DNA of 64,000 nt from Chrysemys picta bellii (Eukaryota), in NCBI RefSeq assembly GCF_011386835.1, contig NC_088800.1, forward strand, positions 24,428,001-24,492,000, read 5' to 3'. The notes under the pieces were generated by a model. It saw nothing but the letters and a program-made list of their open reading frames with translations, was not told the origin of the DNA and made no database searches. Shown in pieces: positions 4,843-58,940 of the stretch. The position numbers were made by a program, and so were the translations under genes. Numbering within the stretch: position 1 is the stretch's first letter; each line of letters begins with the position of its first letter.

Positions 4843-5031
4843 AAAAGAACGAGGAGTACTTGTGGCACCTTAGAGACTAACAAATTTATTTGAGCATAAG
4901 CTTTCGTGGGCTAAAAGTGGGTAGCCCACAAAAACTTATGCTCAAATAAATTTGTTAGTCTCTAAGGTGCCACAAGTACTCCTCGTTCTTTTTGCTGATA
5001 CAGACCAACACGGCTACCACGCTGAAACCTG
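4843..5031 (+). mobile_element. Fold-back Penelope-like pLTR insertion (family A), minimal form
   Basis: ~71-bp inverted arms (4843-4913 / 4922-4992, 2 mismatches), 39-nt tail, 13-bp TSD tctcctc(c/t)cctct (4830-4842, 5032-5044). Confidence 0.8.
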
Positions 5032-20186: not shown

Positions 20187-21293
20187 TTATCCTTTGTCTT
20201 GGAGAAATAGGTTTAGCCACTCCCCAGACCTGCATAGTAAACACACTTCAGTCATCATTTCAGCTTATGTTCACAACTTCACATATAATGTTGTTTACGT
20301 ACATTTCACCATGATATTGTTGACCAATGAGTTTTTAGTTTTCAAATGATACCTTACAAGGCATATTTTCTACAAAGATTATTACAATAGGGGTGTATTC
20401 CATCATAGAGTGACATCACATCAGCTGGGCTTCTGAACTCCATTGACGGGGAGCCACGCCCAAGGAGACCAGCAGAGCCCTGGTGGGCATGTAAGCGCCA
20501 GGGAGAGGAAACTAAGCCTGAGGAGTCTAGTGGAACTCTGGAGGGCATCCAGGCTCCACCCAGAGGCAGCAGCGTATGCATGAGCATGGTGTGAACATAT
20601 GGGCAACCTGCTGTGTGCTGTGTCTCATTCGGGCTTGATTTTGAAATGGTACTACTCCTTGACACCCCCAATTCAACTCCTGCTTCTTGTGATTCAAATA
20701 CAGTACGCTGAAAGGTGATTTGATATTGGCTGAGTACGTTGAATCCCCACAGCACATTATCTTTTCAGGCACATGTCTAGAATCATTCTGAAATATAAGA
20801 CGGTTTGCAGGTTCACCCTTTTGCTTAGTGGAAGAGGGATTTGTTTATTTCCAGCTACTCTAGGATTTTCCCAGGCAGCTTATATTACAAATTGATAAAC
20901 TAGCATACTTATTTTATCTATTATAGGTATTTCTAAGGCACCTGTCACTGTGTTACCTAAGGCCCAGAGTCTCTGCATTGGTCAAGTTGTGATCAGCTCA
21001 AGTGGAAGGGCAAAGATAACTTTGAGCTACCTTTATGAGATCATTAGGCACCAGCCTGGTCCCCTGAATTTAAGACAATAGCCTGAAGTTTTCTCTATTT
21101 AACATTGTTTGCCAGCAGCCCACAGGGGCCATTCAGGCAGCTAGGGATTGGTTCTGAACAGGAGCACTTCTCCACCCACTTCCTCCCTTAAGCCATACAC
21201 TAAGAAGGGGATGGCATAGGAGCTATTACAGAAGCCCTGTGTCATCCGAGGATTCTTCTATGCAAGAGGAATCTATAATTGACCAGTTCAGCA

Positions 21294-21361
21294 GTCTCTA
21301 AGGTGCCACAAGTACTCCTGTTCTTTTTGCAGATACAGACTAACACGGCTGCTACTCTGAA
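21294..21361 (+). mobile_element. Penelope-like pLTR family A 3' fragment with tail
   Basis: agtctctaaggtgccacaagtactcctgttctttttgcagatacagactaacacggctgctactctgaa is nearly identical to the end of the 57767-58205 copy. Confidence 0.8.
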
Positions 21362-21368
21362 TCCAGAT

Positions 21369-21430
21369 CAGTGTTTCTCAAACTTGGGACACTGCTTGTT
21401 TAGGGAAAGCCCCTGGCGGGCCGGGCCAGT
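21369..21430. mobile_element. hAT MITE terminal fragment
   Basis: Starts with cagtgtttctcaaacttggg, a Charlie-like TIR; no partner end. Confidence 0.6.
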
Positions 21431-21630
21431 TTTTTTTTCTCTTACTTAATTGGCCTCTCAGAGTTGGTAAGACAACTCCCACCTTTTCATGCTCTCTGTA
21501 TGTGTATATATATCTCCTCAATATATGTTCCATTCTATGCATCCAAAGAAGTGGGCTGTAGCCCACGAAAGCTTATGCTTAAATAAATTTGTTAGTCTCT
21601 AAGGTGCCACAAGTACTCCGGTTCTTTTTA
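21431..21630 (+). mobile_element. Penelope-like pLTR family A fragment with decayed hammerhead (21539-21578)
   Basis: Reverse complement of 57767-57970; core reads CCAAAGA (G5 lost), stems intact. Confidence 0.8.
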
Positions 21631-22168
21631 CTGATCTGGATGATGGGATTAATTGCACCCTTAGCAAGTTCACAGATGACACTAACCTGGGGGGGAGAGG
21701 TAGATACGCTGGAGGGTAGGGATACGGTCCAGAGTGACCTAGACAAATTGGAGGATTGGGCCAAAAGAAATCTGATGAGGTTCAACAAAGACAAGTGCAG
21801 AGTCCTTCACTTAGGATGGAAGAATCCCATGCACTGTTACAGATTGGGGACCGACTGGCTAAGAAGCAGTTCTGCAGAAAAGGACCTGGGAATTACAGTG
21901 GATGAGAAGCTGGATGTGAGTCAGCAGTGTGCCCTCATTGTCAAGAAGGCTAATGGCATATTGGGCTGCATTAGTAGGAGCATTGCCAGCAGATTGAGGG
22001 AAGTGATTATTCCCCTCTATTCGGCACTGGTGAGGCCACATCTGGAGTATTGCATCCAGTTTTGGTCCCCCCACTACAGAAGGGATGTGGACAAATTGGA
22101 AAGAGTCCAGTGGAGGGCAATGAAAATGATTAGGTGGCTGGGACACATGACTTACGAGGAGAGGCTGA
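21631..22168 (+). mobile_element. CR1 LINE ORF2 (RT C-terminal region) fragment, truncated at both ends, frameshifted
   Basis: ORF 21589-22209 gives GGEVDTLEGRD...FNKDKCRVLHLG...LVRPHLEYC...LERVQ...HMTYEERL; the FxDDT motif lies in another frame before a G7 run. Confidence 0.95.
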
Positions 22169-23508: not shown

Positions 23509-23711
23509 AAAAAGCAACAGAGGGTCCTGTGGCATCTTTAAGACTAACAGAAGTATTGGAGCATAAGCATTCGTGGGTGAATGCCTACTTCATCAGACGC
23601 AAGGCATTCACCCACGAAAGCTTATGCTCCAATACTTCTGTTAGTCTTAAAGGTGCCACAGAAACCTCTGTTGCTTTTTACAGATTCAGACTAACAATGC
23701 TACCCCTCTGA
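23509..23711 (+). mobile_element. Fold-back Penelope-like pLTR insertion (family B) with hammerhead on minus strand (23561-23600)
   Basis: Inverted arms, 32-nt tail, perfect 15-bp TSD tacatgaagattggt (23494-23508, 23712-23726). Confidence 0.85.
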
Positions 23712-23973
23712 TACATGAAGATTGGTGTCACATTGGAATGCTACGGTCATATTCCCTTTCCTCTGACATGCTAACTTTCCCCTGCTACACCAAAAGCTCA
23801 CATGATCCTTCTGGGGTATAAGCCATCTCTATGAGCATCAAACCAAAGTATATATAACTGTAATACTTTCTTAATGCAATACCAAACTCTTGACTCCAAT
23901 CAAAAAATGGAGTCCTTGAAAAATGCAGAGAGAGAAGGAAAGATCTTTCAATTGCCATTGCAAGCTACCTTAA

Positions 23974-28833: not shown

Positions 28834-30738
28834 AACTTTATTTAAAGATTGAATAGCAGGCCAATTAAAGCAATTCCTACTCCAAAAGACAAATTTTTGA
28901 TTTAATTCAAAATGAGATCATTTCAAAGGATTTGGTAGATAGTTTTGCTACAGCTATCGGGATAGTGTAAATAAATACCTCATATCACTTTATTCACATC
29001 TCATTGTATGTGAAATGAATCACATATAGAAACACATAGAATCATTTGCTTACTGAGAATCAAATAATAATCATGTTATCATTTAATATATGTTTCTGTA
29101 TAGTCCTGGGCCTAATTCTCCTTTGACATTTCACTTGTGCTCGTCTGTTATCATTGGACTCTCTTCTAATTTATACCCATGTAACAGAGATGAGAATAAG
29201 GCCCATGATTACACACAATGTGCCAATTTGTATTTGTTCAAATAATTAATGTTTGCAAGTAGATGTTAGCTTACATAAAGATAAGCATGCAATATTGCTT
29301 TTTTTCTGAAGCAAGTTTGTATCCACTAGATGTGCTGTAACTCAAGTACTATCCTCCTCTACTTGTTTGATAATATAAATATGCTAACAACGTTTCATCT
29401 AGATTGCCTGCTCTGCAAAAGGTAAATTATCTAACAGGGAGTTTGCCAAAGTTGGAACACATGTGTTTTCTGGGCAAAAATCTTTATCACGCAGTGTAAT
29501 ATCCTTATTTCTCCACTGTTCTACTCAATGTTTCGTTAGCCATTGAAATATACGGACATGTAAAGAAAAACTTTTGATTCTTTGCAGCAAATTAAACAAA
29601 TCTTTTAGCCATGTGTTTTTATATTTGTACACAGAGTAATTTTTTAATAAGATAAACAAGTCATTGTCATCCTGAAAGATTTCCTTAGTATCTTTCAATT
29701 GATAAAACTGATACAATAATAGAAAGCAATTGACAAAACTGATGCCTCAAAAATTGTTGCTTAACTGATTTGATTGGAAGCAATTTAATGTTGAAAATAC
29801 ATACCCTTATTGTATAACTGGAGAAAAGAAAGAAAAAGTATAGACTGCAAAGCTTTTAACTGTCTTCTACAATAAACTTTATAGGTGGCTCCTGATAATT
29901 GTAATATCTTAAAAAGGAGGATGGTATATGTCATTCTAGTGCCCACACACACACATTTCGGGGGGGGGGGAGGGAGTTTCAAAAAAGAAATGCATTGGAT
30001 TAGTAAAAGTGCCAGATTCTTACTCCTTATACCATTCCCTTTATTCATGATTCATTTCACAGCACGGTACAAAGGATTTATTTAAAAAAAAAACGTAATG
30101 CTTGTTAAATCAGATTACACTGCTTGAATGGACTGGAATAATAATAGGTGAAATCAAAGAACAGCTGTCAGCATAAGAAGCAGTAGTAACTTGATAAACT
30201 AATATAGATGGCTTCATGCAAAGTTCTCAAGATGTTTTCTTCAGTATGATTCAGCCCCAGTTGAGGAATCACGCCTATGCACAGAATTTGGAGTTTCCCC
30301 TCAGGCATGGATGTCTTTGAGGCTGTTGGTGCTGCCCATGGGGAAGCACCAATAGTAATAATAAAATAGTAAATAAGAAATAGGTGAATTAACTCATTTC
30401 CTTTAAAAGAAAGTAGTACACACATTTGTGTACAACCTATTTTGAGTTTGTTTGGGTGACAAATTATGGGAGATTTGTTACTTCACGGCAAGATATTGCA
30501 GTCCATGGTCTGGACCATATGGGAGCTCAGGTTTGCAAAAATATCAAAAATGACATTACATTAGAAATTCCTAACTATGGAAATCAATATATGTTGTGCT
30601 CAACAGCTGGACTTTGGAGGCATAGAAAACATTACAGTATTTGGACCGAAACAATTTTTAGAACTGCAGTAGTGTTTCTCTGTTTTGACAGAAATGTATT
30701 CTTGGTAAAAATTAACAATTATTTTTCTGTTTCTTCAG

Positions 30739-30854
30739 AAAAACGAACAGATAAATCAGCTGTCTCTGGTGCCATTAGGTTGAAAATCAACGTTGAAATA
30801 AAAGGAGAGGAGAAAGTTGCTCCATACCATGTGCAATACACATATTTACATGAG
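30739..30854 (+). CDS. UNC13C: UNC13C coding exon ([39 protein letters not shown])
   Basis: Acceptor ttcag ending 30738, donor gtatgt 30855; 116 nt; G|AA joins in frame; [10 protein letters not shown] is UNC13C-type. Confidence 0.97.
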
Positions 30855-32952
30855 GTATGTTGGTGAAGTTTGTTCATGTACAAGATCATTTTGCTACATA
30901 GAAATTAAATAAATAGAGAACATAGGGCTATGAAGGCTAGAACAGTGATACATTTAGTTTCACTTCAACACGTTTTTCAGTTAAAACTCTTGGAATATGT
31001 ATCGATGATTGAATCTCATGACCAGATTCAAAGTTATTGTATCCAAGGAAGAGAGACTGATATGCTACTACATCAGCAGATTAGTCTTGCCAAATGGTTA
31101 GAAAGTAGAAATAGGTGAAATGGCCATGTGACTTCCTAAGCTTTGCTTCTGCAGTTCTCTACGCTCTACATGTTAAATGCCAGTCATATGCTTGTTAATA
31201 TCATCAAGAATACTAGGATTGTATTTGTTTATTTTTAAATTATTAAAAAAAACCCCTCCAGAATACATATGCTCCCACATCATCCATGGGAGACATGAGA
31301 AATCAGTGATGCAATGTTTAGGATAGTTGACACACAGGCCATAGCAATCCATATGGAGCAGTGTTTCCCTTCCTGGGGGCTGACTGGTCAGTTCTTTCTC
31401 AGTCAGATTTCCGGTTAGTTTCATTTGGACTTTGTCTACAATAGAAGTCCAGGATCAAATTGTGTTGGCAGAGCTTTACATGGAATTAGGAAAGCATCTA
31501 ATAAAATATTAGACTTTTTTTTTCTCCTGCTCATGCCATATAGTTTTCAGATTTTAACTACTGACCTAGGTGGCTTATTTCTAATTTTAGATCCTTAGGA
31601 GGACTTAGGATGTGATTAGGAATAAATAATATGAAAGATAGAGGGTGGGAGAGCAAGGGAGACTCTTCATTCGCTGTGTGAACAAAGGACAATATCTTAT
31701 TATCTATGTACGTCCCGTCCTTCGATTCATTGAAGGGTGCCTTGCAGTGTACAGCAGCACTGGTAGATGAGCATTAATATCTCTGCAATGTCCCAGAAAA
31801 ATAATAATATGAGGACAGGCAGAAGAATTCCTGGGAATGATGGTGAGAAACAAGCAGCACCAAGAGTAGACGGCCTTTGACATAAATTAAAAGAAAATTA
31901 ATCACAAATAAATGCAGCAGCTACTTGAGAGCATCTCTGTGTCCATTAATTCCTGTTTGCATCAGACTGGCCCACCATTTAATTTTTATCCCCCAAGCAC
32001 AAGAAAATAGATAAATGTTGTATGGGTGTGCTATGAAAGGTACAGTACTAAAGCTCTAAAGGGTATCTACAAAAATGTCTCTAAGGTATAGTTGCATTGG
32101 GCACGTGTCTTCATGCACAGTGTGTGTATCTAAGTTGTATAGGGCCCAGATCAGCTTCACTTTGAAGTGAATGGCGGAACACCATTAATATCAATGGTGC
32201 AGGATCACCCGCTACATGGTTATGGACTGGGCTAAAGAGAAATGGTTGTGTAAAGGTAAAATGGAGATCTCAAAATTGTTGGTCATCTTTTGTCATTGAA
32301 AATATCCAGGAAACTGAATTCAACAGTCCTGTTTTTTGGATTTGTTTGTAGCTAAGCCAGGCAATCTGAGAAGAACAAATTCTCTGTCATTGCATGCAAA
32401 TTAAATGCTAGCTCTTGCTGTGAAGGTTGCTAAACCCTGATCCTTGCTATGTCCCTTTGTTCTTTGAGCAATTTCTGAGATATTCTTAACTAATTGCCTA
32501 TAATTCAGAATTTTTAAATCATGAAACTTGAAATTCATTGGTTAAAAATCCAATTCAAGCTGCTGGACAGTTCAGTGAGCATTATAACATAATGATATAA
32601 TTCATTAACAAGGGCACATAAGACAAAAGAGAAACTTCCTGCACTATTTTGTATAGCATTAGAATTGTCTCTGTTGGCAATGGTTAACTGAAATGACCTT
32701 ATGTCAAGGAGATAGATCAGGTTGCTGAATCACTAGCCTGCACTGGGAGAGCTCCATTTAAAAAGTATTTTTAAAGCTTTAGTCTTTCCTCTCCAAATGA
32801 TGGTTAGTTTGGTATTAGTAATTGCAGAGGCAAACAAAAATTGAAATTAATGAATATTCTGAAAAAATATTTTATAATATAGAATAGACTTATATAATGC
32901 CACATAAATATTGAAATTTCCCATTAATTTGAAAAAAATCTCTTACCTTTAG

Positions 32953-33116
32953 AACCTATTCCATTATTTGACTGAAGTTAAATCTAATGGTGGTGTAAAA
33001 ATCCCTGAAGTGAAAGGAGATGAAGCCTGGAAGGTATACTTTGATGCTGCTGCACAAGAAATTGTAGATGAATTTGCAATGCGTTATGGAATTGAATATA
33101 TTTATCAAGCTATGAC
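32953..33116 (+). CDS. UNC13C: UNC13C coding exon ([55 protein letters not shown]); absent from the ORF track
   Basis: Manual translation; acceptor tttag ending 32952, donor gtaagt 33117; 164 nt; phase 0 in, phase 2 out. Confidence 0.96.
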
Positions 33117-34069
33117 GTAAGTATATCATTTCTAATTTTTAAAAAATCTATCAGAGTAGAGTGAAGAATTCAAAACCTTCGTCCTTGTTTCTTCTTTTCA
33201 AATGCAATCCTGATCAAAAAAGTCTGTCTCTTAAATCTATTTCTCAAAGAATACTCAGAGTGAAGTACTTCCCAGTTAACAGTAGAAATGTGAAAATGTT
33301 TTATTAGCTATTATTTTTATCCGCAGAGTATACTTACCAATAGACCATCATAATCTCTGTGGGCCAGATCCAGAGCCCATTGCGGTCAGTGGAAAGACTC
33401 TCATTTTCATCATGGCTTTGGTTCAGTCCAAATTATTTTTGGATTAATCAATAAATCAGTAGGTGTAGTGATATAACATCAGTCCCAGAAGTACAGAAAA
33501 CTTAATGGTGATGTCAATAATACAGTAGTACATTTTCACAATTTTATATATAAAGTATGCTGACCACAACTTCAAAAACTTGTAGGTGATTTGTAGTGGC
33601 ACTAGATAATCTAAATTGAAATACCCTCTGGTCACATTAGAACAGGGCCCCTTACTTAAGGGGCTTTGTGTCTGGAGCTTAAAGGAGAATAATTCTCCAT
33701 TATACACAATATATTTGCCCAGTGGAAAATCTGTCAGTATAAAAGGACCAAATTCTGCTTTCAACCATGCTCACGGAAATCCAGATGAATATTATTAAAT
33801 TCACTAACACTACAAAAGTTGCTGTTATAGATCTTTTTTAATTATTATTATTCAGGCATGTATCTTGTTTCCACCATTTCTTGATAGTATATTTTAAAAA
33901 CAAAGTATCTTCTCTTATAATGCTAAGGCACATAAACCCCAAAGTTTTTCATCACAGGATTTAATGGCACCATCTATTGCAATGGTTATTTCTTTTATTT
34001 ACTGCATCTTATTGTTAAATATTGTACTGGATCTCTATCTGCAAGGTAGGAGGGCATTTGTGTATTTAT

Positions 34070-34265
34070 ATGCACTTGTTTAGTGCAACTCCTCCAAGGA
34101 TCTCAAAGCACATTGGACAAATGAATTAGTTAAACCTTGCAATTCCCCTCTGGTATTATTAAATCCATGCTACATGTAGGGAAACTCATGCACAGGGTGT
34201 GCATACGTAGAACCTAAACCTCTGATTCCCAGTTCCCTGCTCTAACCACTAGATGCATTTACTCT
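34070..34265 (-). mobile_element. MIR-like SINE
   Basis: ccaaggatctcaaagcac...agggaaact...ttcccagttccctgctctaaccactaga is the reverse complement of MIR-like segments. Confidence 0.6.
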
Positions 34266-35322
34266 CTCTCCTTTATCTTTCCATTACCTTTGTACATCGT
34301 TACATCTTGCTTAAAGAGGTGAACTATTACTTAATGTACTATTATAATTTTATAGCTAGATTTATTTCTATTGTACAATGTTCCCATAAATGATTTAGGA
34401 CCAAGTCCTTTAAAGAGAAATGACATTTATTTTATAGTATAAAACAATGCAGTGTATGGTGCCTACTGCCTTCACTTCCTTGATGAAAACAAAAACAACA
34501 CTGGTTTCTACTCCATGATAAACTCTTGAGAGTTAAGGCCTAGGCATGAGATGCCTTTCTCAGAAAAAAACAGGTCTGATTCTCTGTCACAAAGTTCCCT
34601 TCTAACTACCCCTTGGGTTTGACTGGTTATCTCACTGAGGGATAAATGTGCATCAGTCAGAGATCTTTCGCTGAAAAATGTCTTTACTGATATATATATA
34701 TATATTTTTTTTTTTACTTCATGATGACTAGATAAAAAAATCTATTGGAAAGTTTGAGAGTACTGTCATTTTTCCACAGGGTGATTTAAATCTAACTATT
34801 TCTGGATTTCAAATATGATGTAAGCTAGGGTTGTATGTTTGGTTCTTTTGGATTAAGGTTTTCATTTAGTAGTAATAAAAATAGAAAGATTATTTTTTCA
34901 TATAAAGAGGAAACTGCAATTTTCAATTGGTAAATAATGTAACAACAGCCTGATTTTCATCATAAAAAAAGGAAGAGAAACAGAACTGAGCAAATACTGC
35001 AACACATTTTCTAAGAATCTTCATTCCCTTTATTTTTTATGAATTGGCTTAGATTGGTTTGTCCCCTTTTTGTGTTTGCCATCCACAAATATTCTATGAA
35101 CTGATTTTGTCAGGAATTCCAAACTAGAAATTGTAAAGCAAACATTATAGAATATTGCAGAATGTGAATTTCAGATTCATAATCACAAGTAATTTCACCA
35201 GAACCTGGAGACTAAGAATTATGATCATCCAGTCAGGGAAAAGAAGCCTATCATGACCTATTACGTTTTAAATTTTGTGTGCTCACAGTGAATGGCTCAT
35301 ATATAAGTTACAGACCAAGTAT

Positions 35323-35507
35323 CAGAGGGGTAGCTGTGTTAGTCTGAATCTGTAAAAAGCAACAGAGGGTCCTGTGGCACCTTTAAGACTAACAGAAGTA
35401 TTGGAGCATAAGCTTTCGTCTGATGAAGTGGGCATTCACCCATGAAAGCTTACACTCCAATTCTTCTGTTAGTCTTAAAGGTGCCACAGGACCCTCTGTT
35501 GCTTTTT
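35323..35507 (-). mobile_element. Fold-back Penelope-like pLTR insertion (family B), with + strand hammerhead core (35416-35455)
   Basis: Tail on the left (35323-35353), ~65-bp inverted arms, 13-bp TSD acagaccaagtat (35310-35322, 35508-35520). Confidence 0.85.
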
Positions 35508-36159
35508 ACAGACCAAGTATTGTTTGTTTAAATTAATTGGCAATAATTAATTTTGAATAATGAGCATGTTCACAAACCTGTGGACAATTTGTGAATAAAA
35601 AACGGATAATTTATCAAGTAAATTTTATGTAGTGAATTATTCAGCCAAATCTAATGGGCAACTCATAAGAGTATGTGCACTCATACAGCTCAAGAGAGCA
35701 TCTTGGTAATACTGCAGTTCTACTGCAAGGAGTTTTCTTTCGGGGTGATCATCAATTGGCTTTGCTTGTGTTTATGAAAAGACATCTTTTTTGTGGAGTA
35801 TCTTTAACAACCAAGACAAATTTTGTAGTTTCTTGCTTTGGAGAATTGAGTGACCAGAATAAAGAGCAGATCCCATGTGGTAAATATATCTCCAGTCTAA
35901 AAGAAAAGCAATTTTCCAGTATACAACAGAAAGAGAATTTGAATGTAATTACTTGGCTCAGAGGAACACTTTGTAAGCATTTGACACTCCAAGTTCTGGT
36001 TTGCAGACTCTGTCCATTTCATCTCTTTTGGTAAAATTCACAAAAAGCACAACAACTGGCACTGATTAATACCTTTGTTGTTGTTCTCTTCAGAGAGGTT
36101 AAGTGGCCACAGAGACCCTTTCATCCTTAGACCTTATCCTTCCAGGAAAGGCCTGAGGT

Positions 36160-36926
36160 TAGGGTTTCCAGGTATCCATTTTTTTACCAGAACGCCAAGT
36201 CGAAAAGGGACCCTGGTGGCTCTGGTCAGCACTGCTAACTGGGCTGTTAAAAGTCCGATCAGCGGTGCTGCAGGTCTAAAGCAGGGAACCACAGCCAATG
36301 GGAGCTGGGGGGGGGGGGGGGGGAGGGTGGTGCCTGCTGGCAAAAGCAGTGCGCAGAGCCTCCTGCGCCCCTCCCCCCCGCACCTAGGAGCCGGACCCGC
36401 GGACCTGCGGCTGACCACTTCCGCAGCTTAGCGCAGTGCCAGGACAGGAAGGGAGCCTGCCTTAGCCCCGCTGTGCTGCTGACCAGGAGCTGACCGAGAT
36501 AAGCCTGTGCCCCAACTCCAAGCCCCCTGCCCCAGCCCTGAGCCCTCCCCAAACCCTAAACCCCCTCCTACACCCCAAACCCCTCATCCCCAGCCCCAAG
36601 CCCTCACCCCCTCCCACATCCCAACCCCCTGCCTCAACCCACAGCTCTCTCCCGCACTCCGAATCCCTTGGCCCCGCCCCCAGCCTGGAGCCCCCTCCTG
36701 CATCCCAACCCCTCATTCCCAGACCCACCTCAGAGCCCTCACCCCATCCTGCACCCCAACCCTCTGCCCCAGCCCAGTGAAAGTGAGTGAGGGTTGGGGA
36801 GAGTGAGCCACCAAGGGAGGGGGAATGTAGTGAGCAGGGGTGGAGCCTTGGGGAAGGGGCGGGGCCTCGGGGAAGGCACAGGGCTAGGATACTTGGTTTT
36901 GTGCAATTAGAAAGTTAGCAACCCTA
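36160..36926. mobile_element. hAT MITE with C-rich internal minisatellite
   Basis: TIRs tagggtttcca / tagcaacccta; 8-bp flanks cctgaggt / tctgagtt (6/8); internal ccccctcctgcaccccaac-type repeats. Confidence 0.85.
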
Positions 36927-37093
36927 TCTGAGTTACAATGGATGGGGATGGGGCAGTGGGAAAAGGCTTGCAAAGCCACTGCCGATGCAATAGCTGTTCT
37001 GTATGTCAGTCATGAACTCCTGTCTCCAGAGCTGCAGCTCTGCAACTCCTCCAGCTACACTTACTTCACCATAATCCTGTATTGAGCTACTGG

Positions 37094-39865
37094 TTCTTTG
37101 AGTGACTGTATACATGGATTCTACTCCTCTTGGCTGTGCATGCACTCTGTGTGTGCAAGACTAGATTCTTTTGGCCTATAGTATCGGTCGGGGCTGCATC
37201 TGCAGCCTAGGGGTATGTCCACACCACTGAAAGAAGCATGCAGAGTATAGAGAACATACCTGCAAAATCCCCCTAGCACAGGCATAAATAGACTAGCATT
37301 GAAGCTGGTGAGGCACAGTTTAGGCAAGAAAAGACTTGTCTGAAGGGTGTGGGTATGTAGATGAGTACATACCCTATATGTTCTCTACTCCCCAAAGCTA
37401 TGCCTCCCTGTCTACACTGCTCTTATTAGCCTCTATTCCAACTTCAATAACTTCTAACAGTGGTAGGAAGAACCACCACTTAAAACTGAGCCAAGGCATA
37501 GGTCACCTTCTCCAGTGCCTACCTAGGTGAGGCACAAGTCATCACATGCCCAGCTTTTCTGAGTTCAATAGTCAAAGGGCAGCCAATTGCCTGAGAATAG
37601 TCTCTCTGGAGTCCTAGTACTAACTGTTAAGAGAGTGGTGGTGATACCCGCTAAACCTGTAGACTGTCTCTCTCTCAGTAATGATCATTCCATATCCAGT
37701 AACTCAGTACCCACAGCCTCTGTACAGGCAAATTTGGAACCATGCTCCCTGTGCTTTGCACATCGGTACCTAGTGTGTTGGTACCTAGGGCATCTATGGT
37801 TCTGAGTGATTTATATGAGAGCACAGTATTGGAGTCTCCAATACTTGAGGGGATGAGGGTCGTGCTAAGCCACGTCATCAATACAGCAGGTAAAGGAGGG
37901 ATCTGCGATACTGACTTCACCATCTTCACAGTTAAGAGAGCACTACAGAGCCAGAACCCTGCTGACAGGACAACCTCTCTCGGAAGAGGTGTATCTCTTT
38001 TCTTCATCCTCATTGAGGCATAATAGGGATTTCTCTCTGACATGCACCACTTCCTCTTCTGCCAAGCCTGGCAGGCTCACCAGGCCTACAAATGAGGAAC
38101 AGTTGGAACCTGCACAGATCTGTCTAAACAGCTTGCAGCAGTGAGCCTGCCAATCCAGGTCAACAGACTCAGGCTCGTGCTATTGTACTAAAGTAGCTGT
38201 GTAGACATTGTGGCTCGGGCTCTGAAGCTAGCGATGGGTTTCAGAGCTTGAACTCCAGCCCAAGCCACAGCTTCAAATCCCTGTCTATACAACTATTTGT
38301 AGCACAAGCCTGAGTCTGTTGAACTTGGCTGTGAGAATCACTGCTAGGTAGACCTACCTCAAAATATTTGTTGCACATGCCAGTATCCATTCCCGCCATG
38401 TCCAAGGGAGCTGACAGGTTTTGCAGAAAAATGCTCAGAGGATCACCTGGACCCAACTTTGTTATATCTGACAGCCTGGGTGCTGGCTGGCAACACTGAA
38501 AGAAGCTGTTCAGCTAAAGTTTAGACCATTCTGTTCCAAAGCAGGAAACCCTCAACCAGGGTAACTTATAAAGCTAAGTGGAAGAGGCTTTCTGTTTGGG
38601 CATCTCAGCACCAGTTGGTTCCCTTGACATCACCCGTGTCAGCAATATTGGACTATTGACTAGCCCTGAACAAAATTAGGCTATCAACTCCATAACAGTC
38701 CATCTAGCAACAACATCAGCACATCATCCTACTCTCCAGGGCCACACTTTATTTTCCCATGCTACAGTTGCAAGATTCTTTAAGGGCCTTCCTTGTGTTT
38801 TTCACACCAGTTTGAGAGCCCTTTCTCTCTTGGGACCTAAATATAATATTAACAGGGTAGATGGGTCCATCCTCCCCCCGCTCCTCTACCACCTATCCAT
38901 GAAAATGGCCTTTGTAGTAGCTATTGCATCACCTTGGAGAGGTAAGGGAGATATAGTCCTTGGTTCAATGTTTTAAAAGGACAAGGTCAATCTCAGGCTT
39001 CATCCTAAGTTTCTGCCCAAAATTGTTTCAACAAGCTATATGAGTCAGTTTGGTCATCTCCCATTGTTCTTCCCCAAGCCTCACTCAACCCCAGGTAAGC
39101 AAAACTTCTCACACTTGATGTGGTAAGGGCACTGTATTTTTACATTGACAGGATGAAACCATTCAAGAACATCCCTAAATTGTTAGTGGTGGTTGCAGAA
39201 AGGATTAAGGATCAAGCAATAGCCTCTCAAATATTATGCAAGTGGATTTCCAACTGTATAAGGACAAGTTACATATTCGCCAGGTAGATCCACCTAGCCA
39301 CTTTAGAGCTCTTTCCATTAGAGTTCAGGCAGCCTGTTAGAAAAATGTCCCTATTTGTGAAATCCGTAGGGCAGTTGCATGGAGCTTGATCCAGAACTTT
39401 ACAAGATACTACTCTTTAATACAGGCTTGCAGATCAGATGCCTGCTTTGTTAAGGCTGCTCTGCAGTCACTGTTTAAGTAGGACCCCTACTGCCTGCCTC
39501 CAACAACTGCTTGTTAGGTACCAAGAATGGAATCCATGTGGAGAATCACTCAAAGAAAGAAGTTACTTACCTTACAGTAACTGTGTTTCTTCAGGATGTG
39601 TTGTCCAAATAGATTCCATGGCCCATCCTTCTTTCCTGTCCTACTCCTCTGGGATTCTGTAGTGGCAAAGGGACTGAAGGATGGTTGGTCCTGCTCTGCC
39701 CTTTATGCCCTCAGCTGTGGGGACATGACAATATCTGGGATACTGGCGTGGCTTCAACAGACACTGTTGGCCAGGGCAATCTGATGTGACACACCCCAGG
39801 GTGACTCCATGTGGACCACACATCTCAAAGAACCACAGTTGCTCTCCGGTAAGTAACTGTTCTTT
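37094..39865 (+). mobile_element. DIRS tyrosine-recombinase retrotransposon, internally deleted and decayed
   Basis: Left terminus ttctttgagtgactgtatacatggattc; YR remnant ~38440-39481 (YKAKWKR...LHPKFLPK...LHTLDVVRAL...FTRYY...QSLFK*); ICR 39528-39618 complementary to both termini; right terminus 39802-39865. Confidence 0.88.
38130..38360. mobile_element. Harbinger-like palindromic MITE nested in the DIRS element
   Basis: Internal palindrome caacagactcaggctcgtgcta...gtgtagaca / tgtctataca...tagcacaagcctgagtctgttg; ends gtagacctacc. Boundaries approximate. Confidence 0.6.
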
Positions 39866-41012
39866 TATCTTTGCTCCCTCATAGTACCAAAGGCAGGGAA
39901 CCCGCTGAAGTGTGGCTGCTCATACATGTAAGGGCACAGTGGGAATGAGAAGGGGGAATTTGGGAAGCAGTCAGATAGAACAGAAGCAGTACATGGAGAG
40001 AAGGACATTTGGGGCAATGGAGAGAGACAGACAAAGAAGGAGGGCAGTAATGAAGGAAAGCACCTAGACACATTAAAAAGGGTTAAATTTTCCAGCGGTC
40101 CCCCATTTTGAGGATCTGTGTTACACATTGTAGCATGGGGATGTTGATGTATGCTGCAAACTTGAAGGAGAATTATGTGAGTGAGGATGGGAAACTTACA
40201 ATTAAAGTGGTAACAAAATAGAGGAGAAGATGTTTTCGTCTCCTTCCCCAGTCCAATCTCATTTATTTCCCTTTAAAAGAAATAGCCAAACCAGGGGCAA
40301 ATACCCTGACGCTGAAATTATGTATTTGGAGGCCTGGGCATGTGCTATAGTAGAGTCAAGTGCAATAAGCCTTGCGTCTTCTCCTCTCACTAGCAAGAGT
40401 CAGCATGGACAGCACTTAACCCTCCTATCTCAACAACATAATTCTCATTCCAGCAGAGCAATTCCCATTTGCTGTATCACCTCTTTCGCCTACTAGTCTT
40501 TACTGAATGTGACTGAATTGCAGGAAGCACACCAATCACCCACTAAGGTCATTTTCTTCTATAGCTTTTGCTTCGTTTAGGTGTGCTCGTTAATTAGCCT
40601 GTCCTGCATGTGTCTCTGTCAGCTTCAGCTGCTGATAAGATTCATTCTAGCATGAAGAGCAGAAGAGTCACAGGCCCTAGAGATTGGTTGTGATCTTGCA
40701 TTGTTTTAGGGCAGCAATAAATAACGACAGTGGACCTGGCTTTCAGTGATTCTGAGCAATCATGCTCCAAATGAAGTCAGTGGGATGTCATCGCCTCTGA
40801 AAATCAGGCCCCAGGTCAGTTTTGGCTACAGATGCAGTAGCACCATGCCACCCACCGAGCAACTGAGAGTTTTCTTAGTTTTCTGCCTGATCCAGCTCTC
40901 CTTCAAGTCAACAGAAATGTTGCTATTCACTTCAGAGGAATTAGGGTCAGATCCTTAGATTGCAGGCTCTTCTTTCCAGGGCTTTAGGGGGAATTCACCC
41001 CTGTGCTTTGGC

Positions 41013-57430: not shown

Positions 57431-57679
<249 letters not shown>

Positions 57680-57766
57680 TGACATGAAATTTGAAAGAAT
57701 AAAGATGCTCACACTATCACCAATCCTTGAATTAGAATTCAAATTTTAGGACATCAGTGTTTGAAT

Positions 57767-58205
57767 AAAAAGAACAGGAGTACTTGTGGCACCTTAGAGA
57801 CTAACAAATTTATTAGAGCATAAGCTTTCGTGGACTACAGCCCACTTCTTCGGATGCATACAGAGTGGAATAAATATTGAGGAGATATATATACACACAT
57901 ACAGAGAGCATAAACAGGTGGGAGTTGTCTTACCAACTCTGAGAGGCCAATTAAGTAAGAGAAAAAAAAAACTTTTGAAGTGATAATCAAGCTAGCCCAG
58001 TACAGACAGTTTGATAAGAAGTGTGAGGATACTTACAAGGGGAGATAGATTCAATGTTTGTAATGGCTCAGCCATTCCCAGTCCTGAAGTGGGCTGTAGT
58101 CCACGAAAGCTTATGCTCTAATAAATTTGTTAGTCTCTAAGGTGCCACAAGTACTCCTGTTCTTTTTGCGGATACAGACTAACACGGCTGCTACTCTGAA
58201 ACCTG
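57767..58205 (+). mobile_element. Fold-back Penelope-like pLTR insertion (family A), best-preserved copy
   Basis: Perfect 82-bp inverted arms (57767-57848 / 58086-58167), 38-nt tail, 13-bp TSD tcagtgttt(g/t)aat. Confidence 0.88.
57818..57857 (-). ncRNA. Minimal type I hammerhead ribozyme motif (PLE-type), variant core CCGAAGA
   Basis: Minus strand: GCAU-CCGAAGA-A-GUGGGC-UGUA-GUCCAC-GAAA-GCU-U-AUGC; stem I 4 bp, stem II 6 bp, palindromic AGCU stem III. Activity untested. Confidence 0.7.
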
Positions 58206-58940
58206 TCAGTGTTTTAATAAAACCATATTTTCTGATCTTTCTTGAGATTAACAGCTAAGAAAGGAGGGTCATTGTGTGATATTACAATTGGTGAGGCAGT
58301 TTTTTAGAGTTTAGAAAATCAAAAGTTTCATGCAGCATAAGTGTCTGTCTGTGGGTTCCTTCAGTGTTGAAGAATGATATCCACTCCCTATCAGACTATA
58401 AGGATAGTTGAGTAGTCCTTTGATGGTATGAGGCCATTAAATGACCACCAAAAATGTTTCCTGGGTATCAATCTGCCTGCTAATCTAGGGAACTCTTAGT
58501 ATTTCACATAAATTCCAATTCATTAAGCTTATTATGAAACTACTAACATTGTTTCTGGAACTGATTTATATATGATGGAGAGCAAATAAAAGGGTTTCCT
58601 TTAAATCACAAACAGTGTTTCTTTAACCTTTTTCATTGCAGTATTTTCTATGAGATTTTTAGAATTGGCAATGCAATATTTTAAAACTTACATATTGTTA
58701 CCACAGGCCCTAAGAGTTCCCAAAATGGTCAGTTTGGGCCTAACTCTGCTCCCATTGATGTCATTAGGCATTTAACCATTGACTTCAATGGGAGTGTAGA
58801 TGGACCAACACCAAGTGTGGTTGATAATCCCACCCACTGTGTTTATCGCTTTCTTTGTTTTCCTGAAAGTTTTTTTTTCTTAACATTTTAAGGGTCTCGC
58901 TCTTAACCTTATACTTATTTCCTTTTCCCCGATTAACTAG

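What the first reader, a model, noticed from the sequence alone, without database searches (positions are those of the whole stretch)
57767..58205. Fold-back Penelope-like insertion carrying a complete, non-canonical minimal hammerhead ribozyme
Seen: perfect 82-bp inverted arms, a 38-nt tail found only on the direct arm, and a 13-bp TSD. The minus strand at 57857-57818 folds as stem I GCAU/AUGC, core C3-C4-G5-A6-A7-G8-A9, an extra A, stem II GUGGGC/GUCCAC, then GAAA, a self-complementary AGCU stem III and a CUU triplet (cut predicted between 57822 and 57821). Known: Penelope-like element pseudo-LTRs carry minimal type I hammerheads with palindromic stem III thought to act as dimers, and have a ~35-nt tail; an extra A after A9 occurs in a viroid hammerhead. 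Inference: this is a recently mobile, non-coding ribozyme-bearing unit with an unusual U4C/U7A core and a CUU site, which motif searches for CUGANGA and GUC would miss.
Basis: partly seen in the sequence, partly recalled or inferred. Interest (0 to 1): 0.8.

Follow-up and report, generated by a model that had tools for sequence, protein, structure and literature searches.

The report
Truncated Penelope-like fold-back with mutated hammerhead
This is an ordinary, dead-on-arrival fragment of a very abundant Penelope-like retrotransposon. Its inherited minimal hammerhead motif has a mutated core (U4 to C), which is mildly interesting because the lineage kept multiplying with that mutation.

Summary
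There are perfect 82-nt inverted arms, a 38-nt tail on the direct arm only, a 12/13 target-site duplication, and a hammerhead-like motif on the minus strand at 57857-57818.

Two corrections are needed:
- The 237-nt "spacer" is element sequence, so the inverted copy is 319 nt long (57767-58085).
- The fold-back is not a mobile unit. It is a by-product of one insertion. Four other fold-backs in the window have different junctions but the same layout.

The layout (inverted 5'-truncated copy, tail at one end, TSD, hammerhead near the 3' end) matches published Penelope-like element (PLE) hallmarks.

The motif descends from a canonical PLE minimal hammerhead. Older copies in the window carry CUGAUGA, other subfamilies carry CUGAAGA, and the young, very abundant subfamily carries CCGAAGA in about 88-94% of contig depth. 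The "extra A" is normal for PLE hammerheads. U4C is known to reduce activity strongly.

At this locus an 82-bp duplex would bury the motif in any minus-strand transcript. No raw RNA reads were available, so cleavage is untested. Rfam misses the canonical copy too, so its silence says nothing.

Other first-stage notes report the same family elsewhere in this genome.

Verdict: a new member of a known kind, of low to moderate interest.

The parts
57754..57766 (.). Left copy of the target-site duplication (TCAGTGTTTGAAT)
   Evidence: Matches 58206-58218 at 12 of 13 positions. The flank is single-copy (depth about 39, 12 and 39 in three DNA runs).
57767..58085 (-). Inverted, 5'-truncated copy of the PLE 3' region. 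It is 319 nt long, its sense strand is the minus strand, and it has no tail and no ORF.
   Evidence: The whole stretch is a high-copy repeat in three genomes. 57767-57970 matches 21430-21635 at 93%. All three frames are closed.
57818..57857 (-). Hammerhead-like motif. Stem I is 57854-57857 with 57818-57821. The core CCGAAGA is 57853-57847. The extra A is 57846. Stem II is 57845-57840 with 57835-57830. GAAA is 57829-57826. The AGCU palindrome is 57826-57823. U17 is 57822. The predicted cut lies between 57822 and 57821.
   Evidence: Sequence read and fold. Homologous copies with a canonical CUGAUGA core lie at 23584-23596 (-) and 35420-35432 (+).
57767..57848 (-). Left arm of the perfect 82-nt inverted repeat (the part of the inverted copy that is shared with the direct copy)
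   Evidence: pair I1, 100% complementary.
58086..58167 (+). Direct, more severely 5'-truncated copy (right arm). It starts at G8 of the motif, so it lacks stem I 5' and C3 to A7.
58168..58205 (+). 38-nt PLE 'tail', present on the direct copy only
   Evidence: a tail follows only the direct arm at all five loci. In Anolis Poseidon the tail is the stretch between two reverse-transcription start sites (PMC11167929).
58128..58184 (+). Conserved arm-to-tail stem (58128-58136 pairs with 58176-58184). Its loop contains the tail-less end of the element (58167/58168).
   Evidence: RNAalifold on four direct arms gives a 9-bp stem kept in both subfamilies, plus one compensatory U-A/A-U pair. It was also found as pair I8.
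58206..58218 (.). Right copy of the target-site duplication (TCAGTGTTTTAAT)

Best explanation
The stretch is one dead-on-arrival insertion of the 3' end of a very abundant Penelope-like retroelement (PLE) family.

Shown:
- An inverted 319-nt copy without a tail abuts a direct 82-nt copy with a 38-nt tail.
- The pair is flanked by a 13-bp target duplication.
- There is no ORF.
- The family occurs as tens of thousands of contig pieces per genome.

Inferred mechanism, by analogy with the Anolis Poseidon enzyme, which cuts and extends both target strands and starts reverse transcription at two sites that bracket the tail:
- One nicked target strand primed cDNA from the outer start site, giving the direct copy with its tail.
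- The other strand primed from the inner start site, giving the inverted copy without a tail.
- The two 5'-truncated cDNAs were then joined. This yields the fold-back with a one-sided tail.

The hammerhead-like motif was simply inherited from the template RNA. It descends from the canonical PLE minimal hammerhead (CUGAUGA, then CUGAAGA, then CCGAAGA). In the young subfamily it carries a U4C change fixed in the source copies.

Most likely (inferred) this core is catalytically weak or inactive, and cleavage was not needed for the lineage to keep amplifying. At this particular locus the motif is inert. Any minus-strand transcript would lock stem II, the GAAA box and the cut site into an 82-bp perfect duplex, and the locus' unique flank is absent from the one putative RNA run laid.
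For: Architecture:
- Searches show the arms, the one-sided tail and the TSD.
- Searches show four more fold-backs in the window (4843-5031, 21293-21635, 23509-23717, 35316-35507). Each has a tail on the direct arm and its own junction. TSDs are 11-14 bp, for example 14/14 at 23.5 kb.

Repeat nature:
- laid 29,000-40,000 contig pieces per DNA run on 57767-58085, while the flank is single-copy.
- Contigs of three organism labels cross the left junction with 0-1 differences.

Published PLE hallmarks:
- High 5' truncation, an adjacent inverted 5'-truncated copy, a 30-40 bp tail at one end and a hammerhead in the pLTR (PMC8557442).
- Both strands cut and extended, two reverse-transcription start sites that define the tail, initiation in an AC-rich stem-loop, and hammerhead mutants that do not affect insertion (PMC11167929).
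- One search finds a conserved stem between the arm and the AC-rich tail that encloses the inner end.

Descent of the motif:
- Searches show CUGAUGA in the older copies.
- Loose-end consensi show subfamilies with CUGAAGA and CUGAUGA.
- At 57852 only 6-12% of depth reads U4, and that site is a CpG. No variant reaches 5% at the other 5'-core positions (57846-57850, 57853). Only CpG decay occurs: G5 at 57851 (3-7%) and, in the GAAA box, G12 at 57829 (4-9%).

Impairment:
- U4C 'considerably decreases activity in vitro' (PMC3088659).
- All single mutants of the CUGA turn have low activity (PMC9901934).
- PLE minimal hammerheads have low activity even when canonical (PMC4209133).

Sequestration and silence:
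- One search gives -205.9 kcal/mol, z = -18.8, with the 82-bp stem.
- One search shows X25 depth 0 on 57600-57752.
Against: - No RT or GIY-YIG coding sequence was seen at this locus or in the nine ORFs of 120 aa or more in the window. The link to an autonomous PLE therefore rests on structural hallmarks, the literature and unchecked notes from other windows.
- The two-strand priming model is taken from one Anolis element studied in vitro. That study saw no difference in start site between strands, whereas here the tail is always on the direct arm.
- The block GAAA / stem III / cut site / stem I 3' is 91% identical between young and old subfamilies, against 72-75% for the neighbouring arm and tail. 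This hints that part of the motif is still constrained.
- A viroid U4C variant stays functional in vivo (PMC3088659), and the Anolis hammerhead is protein-assisted (PMC11167929). Residual activity of the C4 core therefore cannot be excluded.
- All runs were contigs, not raw reads, so RNA ends and expression could not be examined.
Confidence: 0.78

Rival explanations
1. One reading: the C4/A7 motif is a working, selected hammerhead (dimeric or protein-assisted) that processes the element's RNA, and the variant core is a tolerated or adaptive form.
For: - All other defining positions are intact: C3, G5, A6, G8, A9, G10.1-C11.1, G12-A14, A15.1-U16.1 and the NUH triplet.
- The isolated motif folds into stems I and II.
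- 90% of pair cells are kept across four copies, against 17-49% in slid controls.
- The variable sites in stem II (57830, 57834, 57840) all give G.U wobbles rather than breaks.
- The sixth stem II pair is C-G in the young subfamily and U-A in two other subfamilies seen as loose ends.
- The 3' half of the motif is the best-conserved block between subfamilies.
- A U4C viroid variant is viable in vivo (PMC3088659).
- The Anolis PLE hammerhead cleaves only with protein (PMC11167929).
Against: - U4 lies in the uridine turn that forms the catalytic pocket. U4C and all other single changes there give low activity (PMC3088659, PMC9901934).
- Minimal PLE hammerheads are already poor cleavers (PMC4209133).
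- Hammerhead-dead mutants insert normally in vitro, and no RNA-seq ends were seen at the site in Anolis (PMC11167929).
- Depth along the element shows no step at the predicted cut. It drops about 12% there, against 44-61% further 5' (this measure is coarse).
- There is no compensatory double change among the in-window copies.
- Variation within a young repeat family is mostly neutral decay after insertion and says little about selection.
Confidence: 0.17
2. The young subfamily is a short non-autonomous derivative (pLTR-only, SINE-like or retrozyme-like) mobilised in trans by PLE enzymes, rather than truncated copies of a coding element. This is compatible with the best explanation for this locus.
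For: - Copy number is very high.
- There is no ORF in 319 nt.
- The stop codon and the lost AUG, relative to the older subfamily, make the region non-coding.
- Vertebrate non-LTR retrozymes are proposed to be non-autonomous pLTR derivatives of PLEs (bioRxiv 10.64898/2026.07.22.740005).
Against: - There is no tandem array here, whereas retrozymes are tandem.
- The 5' end of the family was not reached. Repeat depth continues to 58085, where this copy is truncated.
- Other first-stage notes report RT/GIY-YIG ORFs in this genome (unchecked).
Confidence: 0.3
3. A DNA transposon or MITE with 82-bp terminal inverted repeats and a TSD.
For: Perfect terminal inverted repeats and a flanking direct duplication.
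Against: - The ends are asymmetric, with a 38-nt tail on one side only at all five loci.
- Arm lengths and junctions differ between copies, and TSD length varies from 11 to 14 bp.
- The 'internal' part is continuous with one arm as a single 319-nt antisense copy.
- The depth profile falls towards the 5' side, as in reverse-transcribed, 5'-truncated copies.
Confidence: 0.02

Closest known systems
Minimal hammerheads of metazoan Penelope-like elements (Cervera and De la Pena 2014, PMC4209133)
   Same: - Type I layout with a short helix I (4 bp) and a long helix II (6 bp).
- An unpaired nucleotide between A9 and G10.1.
- A G10.1-C11.1 pair.
- No real helix III, but a palindromic 15.2-16.2 (AGCU) suited to dimer formation.
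- Located near the element's 3' repeat, often as two motifs close together on opposite strands.
- That paper reports such motifs in turtle and snakes.
   Different: The core reads CCGAAGA instead of CUGANGA, so their descriptor would not retrieve it. Older subfamilies in the same window do have CUGAUGA.
Poseidon element PAc of Anolis carolinensis (PMC11167929)
   Same: - A hammerhead lies upstream of the insertion's 3' end.
- The tail is bounded by two discrete 3' ends.
- An AC-rich stem-loop sits at the initiation region (here the arm-to-tail stem).
- The geometry is similar. Here the ends lie 55 and 93 nt after the predicted cut. In PAc the start sites lie roughly 85-92 nt after it.
   Different: In PAc the region is the start of the ORF. 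Here no frame stays open in the young subfamily. There is no biochemical data for this family. PAc has a canonical core with tested C3/G8 mutants.
Natural U4C hammerhead variant of a viroid (Ambros and Flores 1998, as cited in PMC3088659)
   Same: The same core substitution occurs in a naturally occurring hammerhead.
   Different: The viroid motif is a full-size type III hammerhead with tertiary contacts. The variant was a minority sequence, not the fixed state of a family with tens of thousands of genomic copies.
Complex tandem or inverted PLE insertions with a one-sided tail (PMC8557442, Fig. 2 legend and text)
   Same: An inverted 5'-truncated copy adjacent to a direct copy, a 30-40 bp tail at one end only, and high 5' truncation.
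   Different: None of note; this locus is a textbook small example.
Animal non-LTR retrozymes (PMC7229834; bioRxiv 10.64898/2026.07.22.740005)
   Same: Non-coding, hammerhead-bearing sequence related to PLE terminal repeats.
   Different: Retrozymes are head-to-tail tandem arrays with canonical type I hammerheads. Here there is a single inverted pair and no tandem repeat.

Membership tests
Penelope-like element (endonuclease-bearing) insertion | Single ORF with telomerase-like RT and GIY-YIG endonuclease in the parent element | not testable with these tools
   There is no ORF in the 319-nt copy. There is no Pfam hit in the nine ORFs of 120 aa or more in the window. The rest of the genome could not be searched. 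Other first-stage notes mention RT/GIY-YIG ORFs in this genome, but these are unchecked.
Penelope-like element (endonuclease-bearing) insertion | Inverted or tandem 5'-truncated partial copy adjacent to the main copy (pseudo-LTR structure) | tested here: met
   Searches show it. The same layout occurs at five loci in the window. It is described as typical in PMC8557442.
Penelope-like element (endonuclease-bearing) insertion | 30-40 bp tail at one end only | tested here: met
   The tail is 38 nt at 58168-58205. It is about 33-38 nt at the other loci and always lies on the direct arm.
Penelope-like element (endonuclease-bearing) insertion | Hammerhead motif in the terminal repeat | tested here: met
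   The core is canonical in the older copies (23584-23596, 35420-35432) and is the C4 variant in the young copies (57841-57853, 21543-21555).
Hammerhead ribozyme (PLE minimal type I) | Conserved 5' core C3-U4-G5-A6-N7-G8-A9 | tested here: not met
   Position 4 is C (57852) in this copy and in about 88-94% of family depth. All other positions fit.
Hammerhead ribozyme (PLE minimal type I) | G12-A13-A14 box, A15.1-U16.1 pair, NUH cleavage triplet | tested here: met
   GAAA, then AGCU, then U17 (triplet CUU) at 57829-57822. The block is kept in nine arms of the window.
Hammerhead ribozyme (PLE minimal type I) | Helices I and II with G10.1-C11.1; unpaired nucleotide after A9; palindromic 15.2-16.2 | tested here: met
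   Fold and pair counts (90% paired). These features are listed as conserved for PLE hammerheads in PMC4209133.
Hammerhead ribozyme (PLE minimal type I) | Covariation in helices across copies | tested here: inconclusive
   There is no double change among the four in-window copies. One possible C-G/U-A exchange at the sixth pair of helix II rests on low-agreement loose-end consensi.
Hammerhead ribozyme (PLE minimal type I) | Self-cleavage at the predicted site | not testable with these tools
   Only contigs were available, not raw RNA reads. No bench assay was possible.
Hammerhead ribozyme (Rfam families) | Match to an Rfam hammerhead covariance model | tested here: not met
   There is no hit at gathering score in the window or at E <= 10 around the locus. 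As a control, the canonical-core copy at 23.5 kb is not found either, so this test does not discriminate.
Non-LTR retrozyme | Head-to-tail tandem repeats of a hammerhead-bearing unit | tested here: not met
   There is no tandem array and no direct repeat of the unit.
MITE or TIR DNA transposon | Symmetric terminal inverted repeats at both ends and a TSD of fixed length | tested here: not met
   The one-sided tail makes the ends asymmetric. Junctions vary and TSDs are 11-14 bp.

The most novel reading that the evidence does not exclude
The most recently and massively amplified PLE subfamily of this genome has a U4C hammerhead core fixed in its source copies. There are two possible readings. Either canonical hammerhead catalysis is dispensable for PLE retrotransposition in vivo, which would be a natural counterpart of the in vitro result for Anolis Poseidon. 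Or a C4 core is rescued by the element's protein, which would be the first fixed U4C hammerhead in a DNA genome.
Probability: 0.55. Interest if true: 0.45.

Novelty: new member of a known kind. Interest (0 to 1): 0.27.

Why it matters
As an object it is routine repeat annotation: a truncated Penelope-like insertion. The one point of wider interest concerns what PLE hammerheads are for, which is still open. They cleave poorly in vitro, and in the one element tested they are not needed for insertion in vitro. Here a lineage reached very high copy number after changing a core nucleotide that normally cripples the ribozyme. That makes it a natural test case. Comparing C4 and U4 subfamilies for cleavage, RNA ends and copy-number history could show whether catalysis matters for PLE propagation. 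It also warns that descriptor and Rfam searches undercount PLE hammerhead relatives.

Tried and rejected
- Rfam at gathering score and at E <= 10 gave no hammerhead. A control on the canonical-core copy also gave none, only generic hairpin matches to miRNA families. Rfam is therefore uninformative here.
- Two scans of metagenome contigs for family copies were run. The first found nothing. The second found five unrelated bacterial chance matches. No extra copies were obtained for covariation analysis.
- A search for raw-read RNA runs, to look for RNA ends at the predicted cut, returned only contig-level runs. Expression and cleavage in vivo could not be tested.
- I considered a coding reading by analogy with Anolis PAc, where the ORF starts at the hammerhead. 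The older subfamily has an open frame of about 39 codons from the AUG inside CUGAUGA to a stop at the tail end. The young subfamily loses that AUG and has a stop at codon 22, and no frame is shared. I rejected this as probably chance.
- I rejected the MITE/TIR-transposon reading because of the asymmetric tail and variable junctions.
- I rejected the retrozyme reading because there is no tandem array.
- I rejected snap-back (self-primed) synthesis as the origin of the fold-back on reasoning. It would only make the second strand of one copy, not an inverted duplication with a tail on one arm.
- A Pfam scan of the nine ORFs of 120 aa or more found no RT or endonuclease.

Full report
**Observation**

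- Arms 57767-57848 and 58086-58167 are 82 nt long and 100% complementary.
- A 38-nt extension (58168-58205) follows only the direct arm.
- The flanks 57754-57766 and 58206-58218 match at 12 of 13 positions.
- On the minus strand, 57857->57818 reads GCAU-CCGAAGA-A-GUGGGC-UGUA-GUCCAC-GAAA-GCUU|AUGC.
- Folded alone, this 40-mer adopts stem I plus stem II as its minimum-energy structure (-11.1 kcal/mol). That is only 1.7 sd better than shuffles.

**What lies between the arms**

The 237 nt between the arms are not a unique spacer.
- blastn inside the window matches 57767-57970 to 21430-21635 at 93%.
- I laid contigs of three DNA runs and one putative RNA run on 57600-58085. They put 29,000-40,000 pieces per DNA run on 57767-58085. 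The left flank stays at single-copy depth, and individual contigs run through 57831-58061.
- The locus is therefore an inverted 319-nt copy without a tail, abutting a direct 82-nt copy with a tail.
- None of the three frames of the 319-nt copy is open.

**The family in the window**

Four more insertions have the same layout: 4843-5031, 21293-21635, 23509-23717 and 35316-35507.
- In the alignment of all ten arms, the tail follows the direct arm only.
- TSDs are 11-14 bp, for example 14/14 at 23.5 kb.
- Junction positions and arm lengths differ from locus to locus. The fold-back is therefore produced anew at each insertion and is not itself a transposing unit.
- Contigs of three organism labels cross the left junction of this insertion with 0-1 differences (records 1, 9 and 17). 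It is fixed or shared among very close relatives.
- Several observations make it a young copy: the perfect arms, the retained CpGs and only a few differences from the majority letters of the family. The age cannot be stated more precisely.

**Comparison with known PLE structure**

Published descriptions list the following as typical of Penelope-like elements: high 5' truncation, an inverted 5'-truncated copy next to the main copy, a 30-40 bp tail at one end only, and hammerhead motifs in the terminal repeats (PMC8557442).

For the Anolis Poseidon element PAc (PMC11167929):
- The purified protein cuts and extends both target strands.
- Reverse transcription starts at two internal sites whose spacing is the tail, in an AC-rich stem-loop.
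- Hammerhead-dead mutants insert normally.
- The hammerhead cleaves only when protein is added.
- No RNA-seq ends were seen at the cut site.

In the present family a 9-bp stem between the arm (58128-58136) and the AC-rich tail (58176-58184) is kept in both subfamilies, with one compensatory pair beside it. It encloses the tail-less end.

I therefore infer the following mechanism:
- One target strand primed from the outer start, giving the direct copy with its tail.
- The other strand primed from the inner start, giving the inverted copy without a tail.
- The truncated cDNAs were then joined.

This is an inference from one in vitro system, not a result shown here.

**The hammerhead-like motif**

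It is not a chance match. The older subfamily in the window, about 75-80% identical, carries CUGAUGA-A-GUGGG...CCCAC-GAAA-GCUU|AUGC at 23.5 kb and 35.4 kb. This has every feature Cervera and De la Pena list for metazoan PLE minimal hammerheads, which they also report in turtle and snakes (PMC4209133):
- a short helix I;
- a long helix II;
- an unpaired nucleotide between 9 and 10.1;
- a G10.1-C11.1 pair;
- a palindromic 15.2-16.2.

The real deviation is U4 to C.

The pile-up shows the following:
- 88-94% of depth has C at position 4 (57852). The 6-12% with U sits at a CpG and may be deamination.
- G5 (57851), C11.1 and G12 show CpG decay only.
- No other variant reaches 5% in the core.
- Loose-end consensi reveal further subfamilies with CUGAAGA and CUGAUGA cores.

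The likely series is CUGAUGA, then CUGAAGA, then CCGAAGA. The last state is fixed in the source copies of the young, abundant subfamily.

**Is the C4 motif active?**

This is untested.

Against activity:
- U4 belongs to the uridine turn of the catalytic pocket.
- A natural viroid U4C variant "considerably decreases activity in vitro" (PMC3088659).
- Comprehensive mutagenesis found low activity for all single mutants of the CUGA turn (PMC9901934).
- Canonical PLE minimal hammerheads are already weak (PMC4209133).
- Depth along the element shows no step at the predicted cut (a coarse measure).

For residual function:
- All other core positions are intact.
- 90% of pair cells are kept in four copies, against 17-49% in slid controls.
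- Variable stem II sites give wobbles.
- The block from GAAA to stem I 3' is 91% identical between subfamilies, against 72-75% for the neighbouring arm and tail.
- The viroid variant remained viable in vivo.

No compensatory double change is seen among the in-window copies. One C-G/U-A exchange in helix II rests on low-agreement consensi.

**This locus**

- A minus-strand transcript across the locus folds into the 82-bp perfect duplex (-205.9 kcal/mol, z = -18.8). This buries stem II, the GAAA box, the cut site and stem I 3'.
- The unique flank has zero depth in the one putative RNA run laid.
- The direct arm begins at G8 and so has no complete motif.

**Database controls**

- Rfam finds no hammerhead in the window or around the locus at E <= 10.
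- It also misses the canonical-core copy, so its silence is not informative.
- Two metagenome scans for more copies gave nothing useful.
- No raw-read RNA runs were offered.

**Verdict**

This is a textbook small PLE fold-back insertion carrying a core-mutated descendant of the known PLE minimal hammerhead.
- The object is ordinary.
- The fixed U4C core in a highly successful subfamily is a modest, testable point about whether PLE hammerhead catalysis matters.
- First-stage notes on other windows of this genome describe the same family, and also RT/GIY-YIG ORFs. I treat these as leads only.

Noticed in passing
window 4843-5031; 23509-23717; 35316-35507: Three more complete fold-back insertions of the same PLE family. 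One is of the young subfamily and two are of an older subfamily with a canonical CUGAUGA core. Each has a tail on the direct arm and its own TSD.
   Followed up: yes
window 21293-21647: A complex copy. A short arm plus tail (21293-21364) lies in the same orientation as a long tail-less copy (21430-21635). They are separated by 65 nt that begin with the reverse complement (21365-21374) of the 10-bp flank repeated at 21638-21647. It looks like a standard fold-back in which the short arm and about 65 bp of flank were inverted, or like an assembly artefact. The insertion sits in a CR1-like LINE ORF2 C-terminal fragment. That identification is from the translation and from memory; Pfam gave no hit.
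   Followed up: partly
window 58086, about 4915, about 23601: In 3 of 5 loci the direct (tail-bearing) arm begins within 1-2 nt of the same position. This is the 5' base of hammerhead helix II (G8/A9), not the predicted cleavage site. Family depth also falls most steeply at 57838-57871. It may be a reverse-transcriptase stalling or template-switch hotspot.
   Followed up: partly
window 58128-58136 with 58176-58184 (and equivalents at 4.9, 23.6 and 35.3 kb): A conserved 9-bp stem joins the arm to the AC-rich tail, with one compensatory pair between subfamilies. It is a candidate recognition or initiation structure, like the AC-rich stem-loop of Anolis PAc.
   Followed up: partly
window 57851-57852: C4-G5 of the variant core is a CpG. 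Deamination on the sense strand turns CCGAAGA back into the canonical CUGAAGA. 6-12% of family depth shows this letter.
   Followed up: partly
window 23560-23717 and 35316-35432: In the older subfamily an open frame of about 39 codons runs from the AUG inside CUGAUGA to a stop at the end of the tail. It is reminiscent of PAc, whose ORF starts at the hammerhead, but it is not kept in the young subfamily. It is probably chance.
   Followed up: partly
window 23522-23665: The fold-back at 23.5 kb gives sub-threshold Rfam matches to several miRNA hairpin families (mir-548 at 55 bits against a gathering score of 90, and others) on both strands. These are generic long-hairpin matches, not evidence of a miRNA gene.
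   Followed up: no
window 23685-23722 and 35311-35348: In both older copies the boundary between tail and TSD reads ACATG or ACTTG. This is part of the duplicated target, and it resembles the last five tail letters (ACCTG) of the young copies. It may reflect microhomology between target and template at initiation.
   Followed up: no
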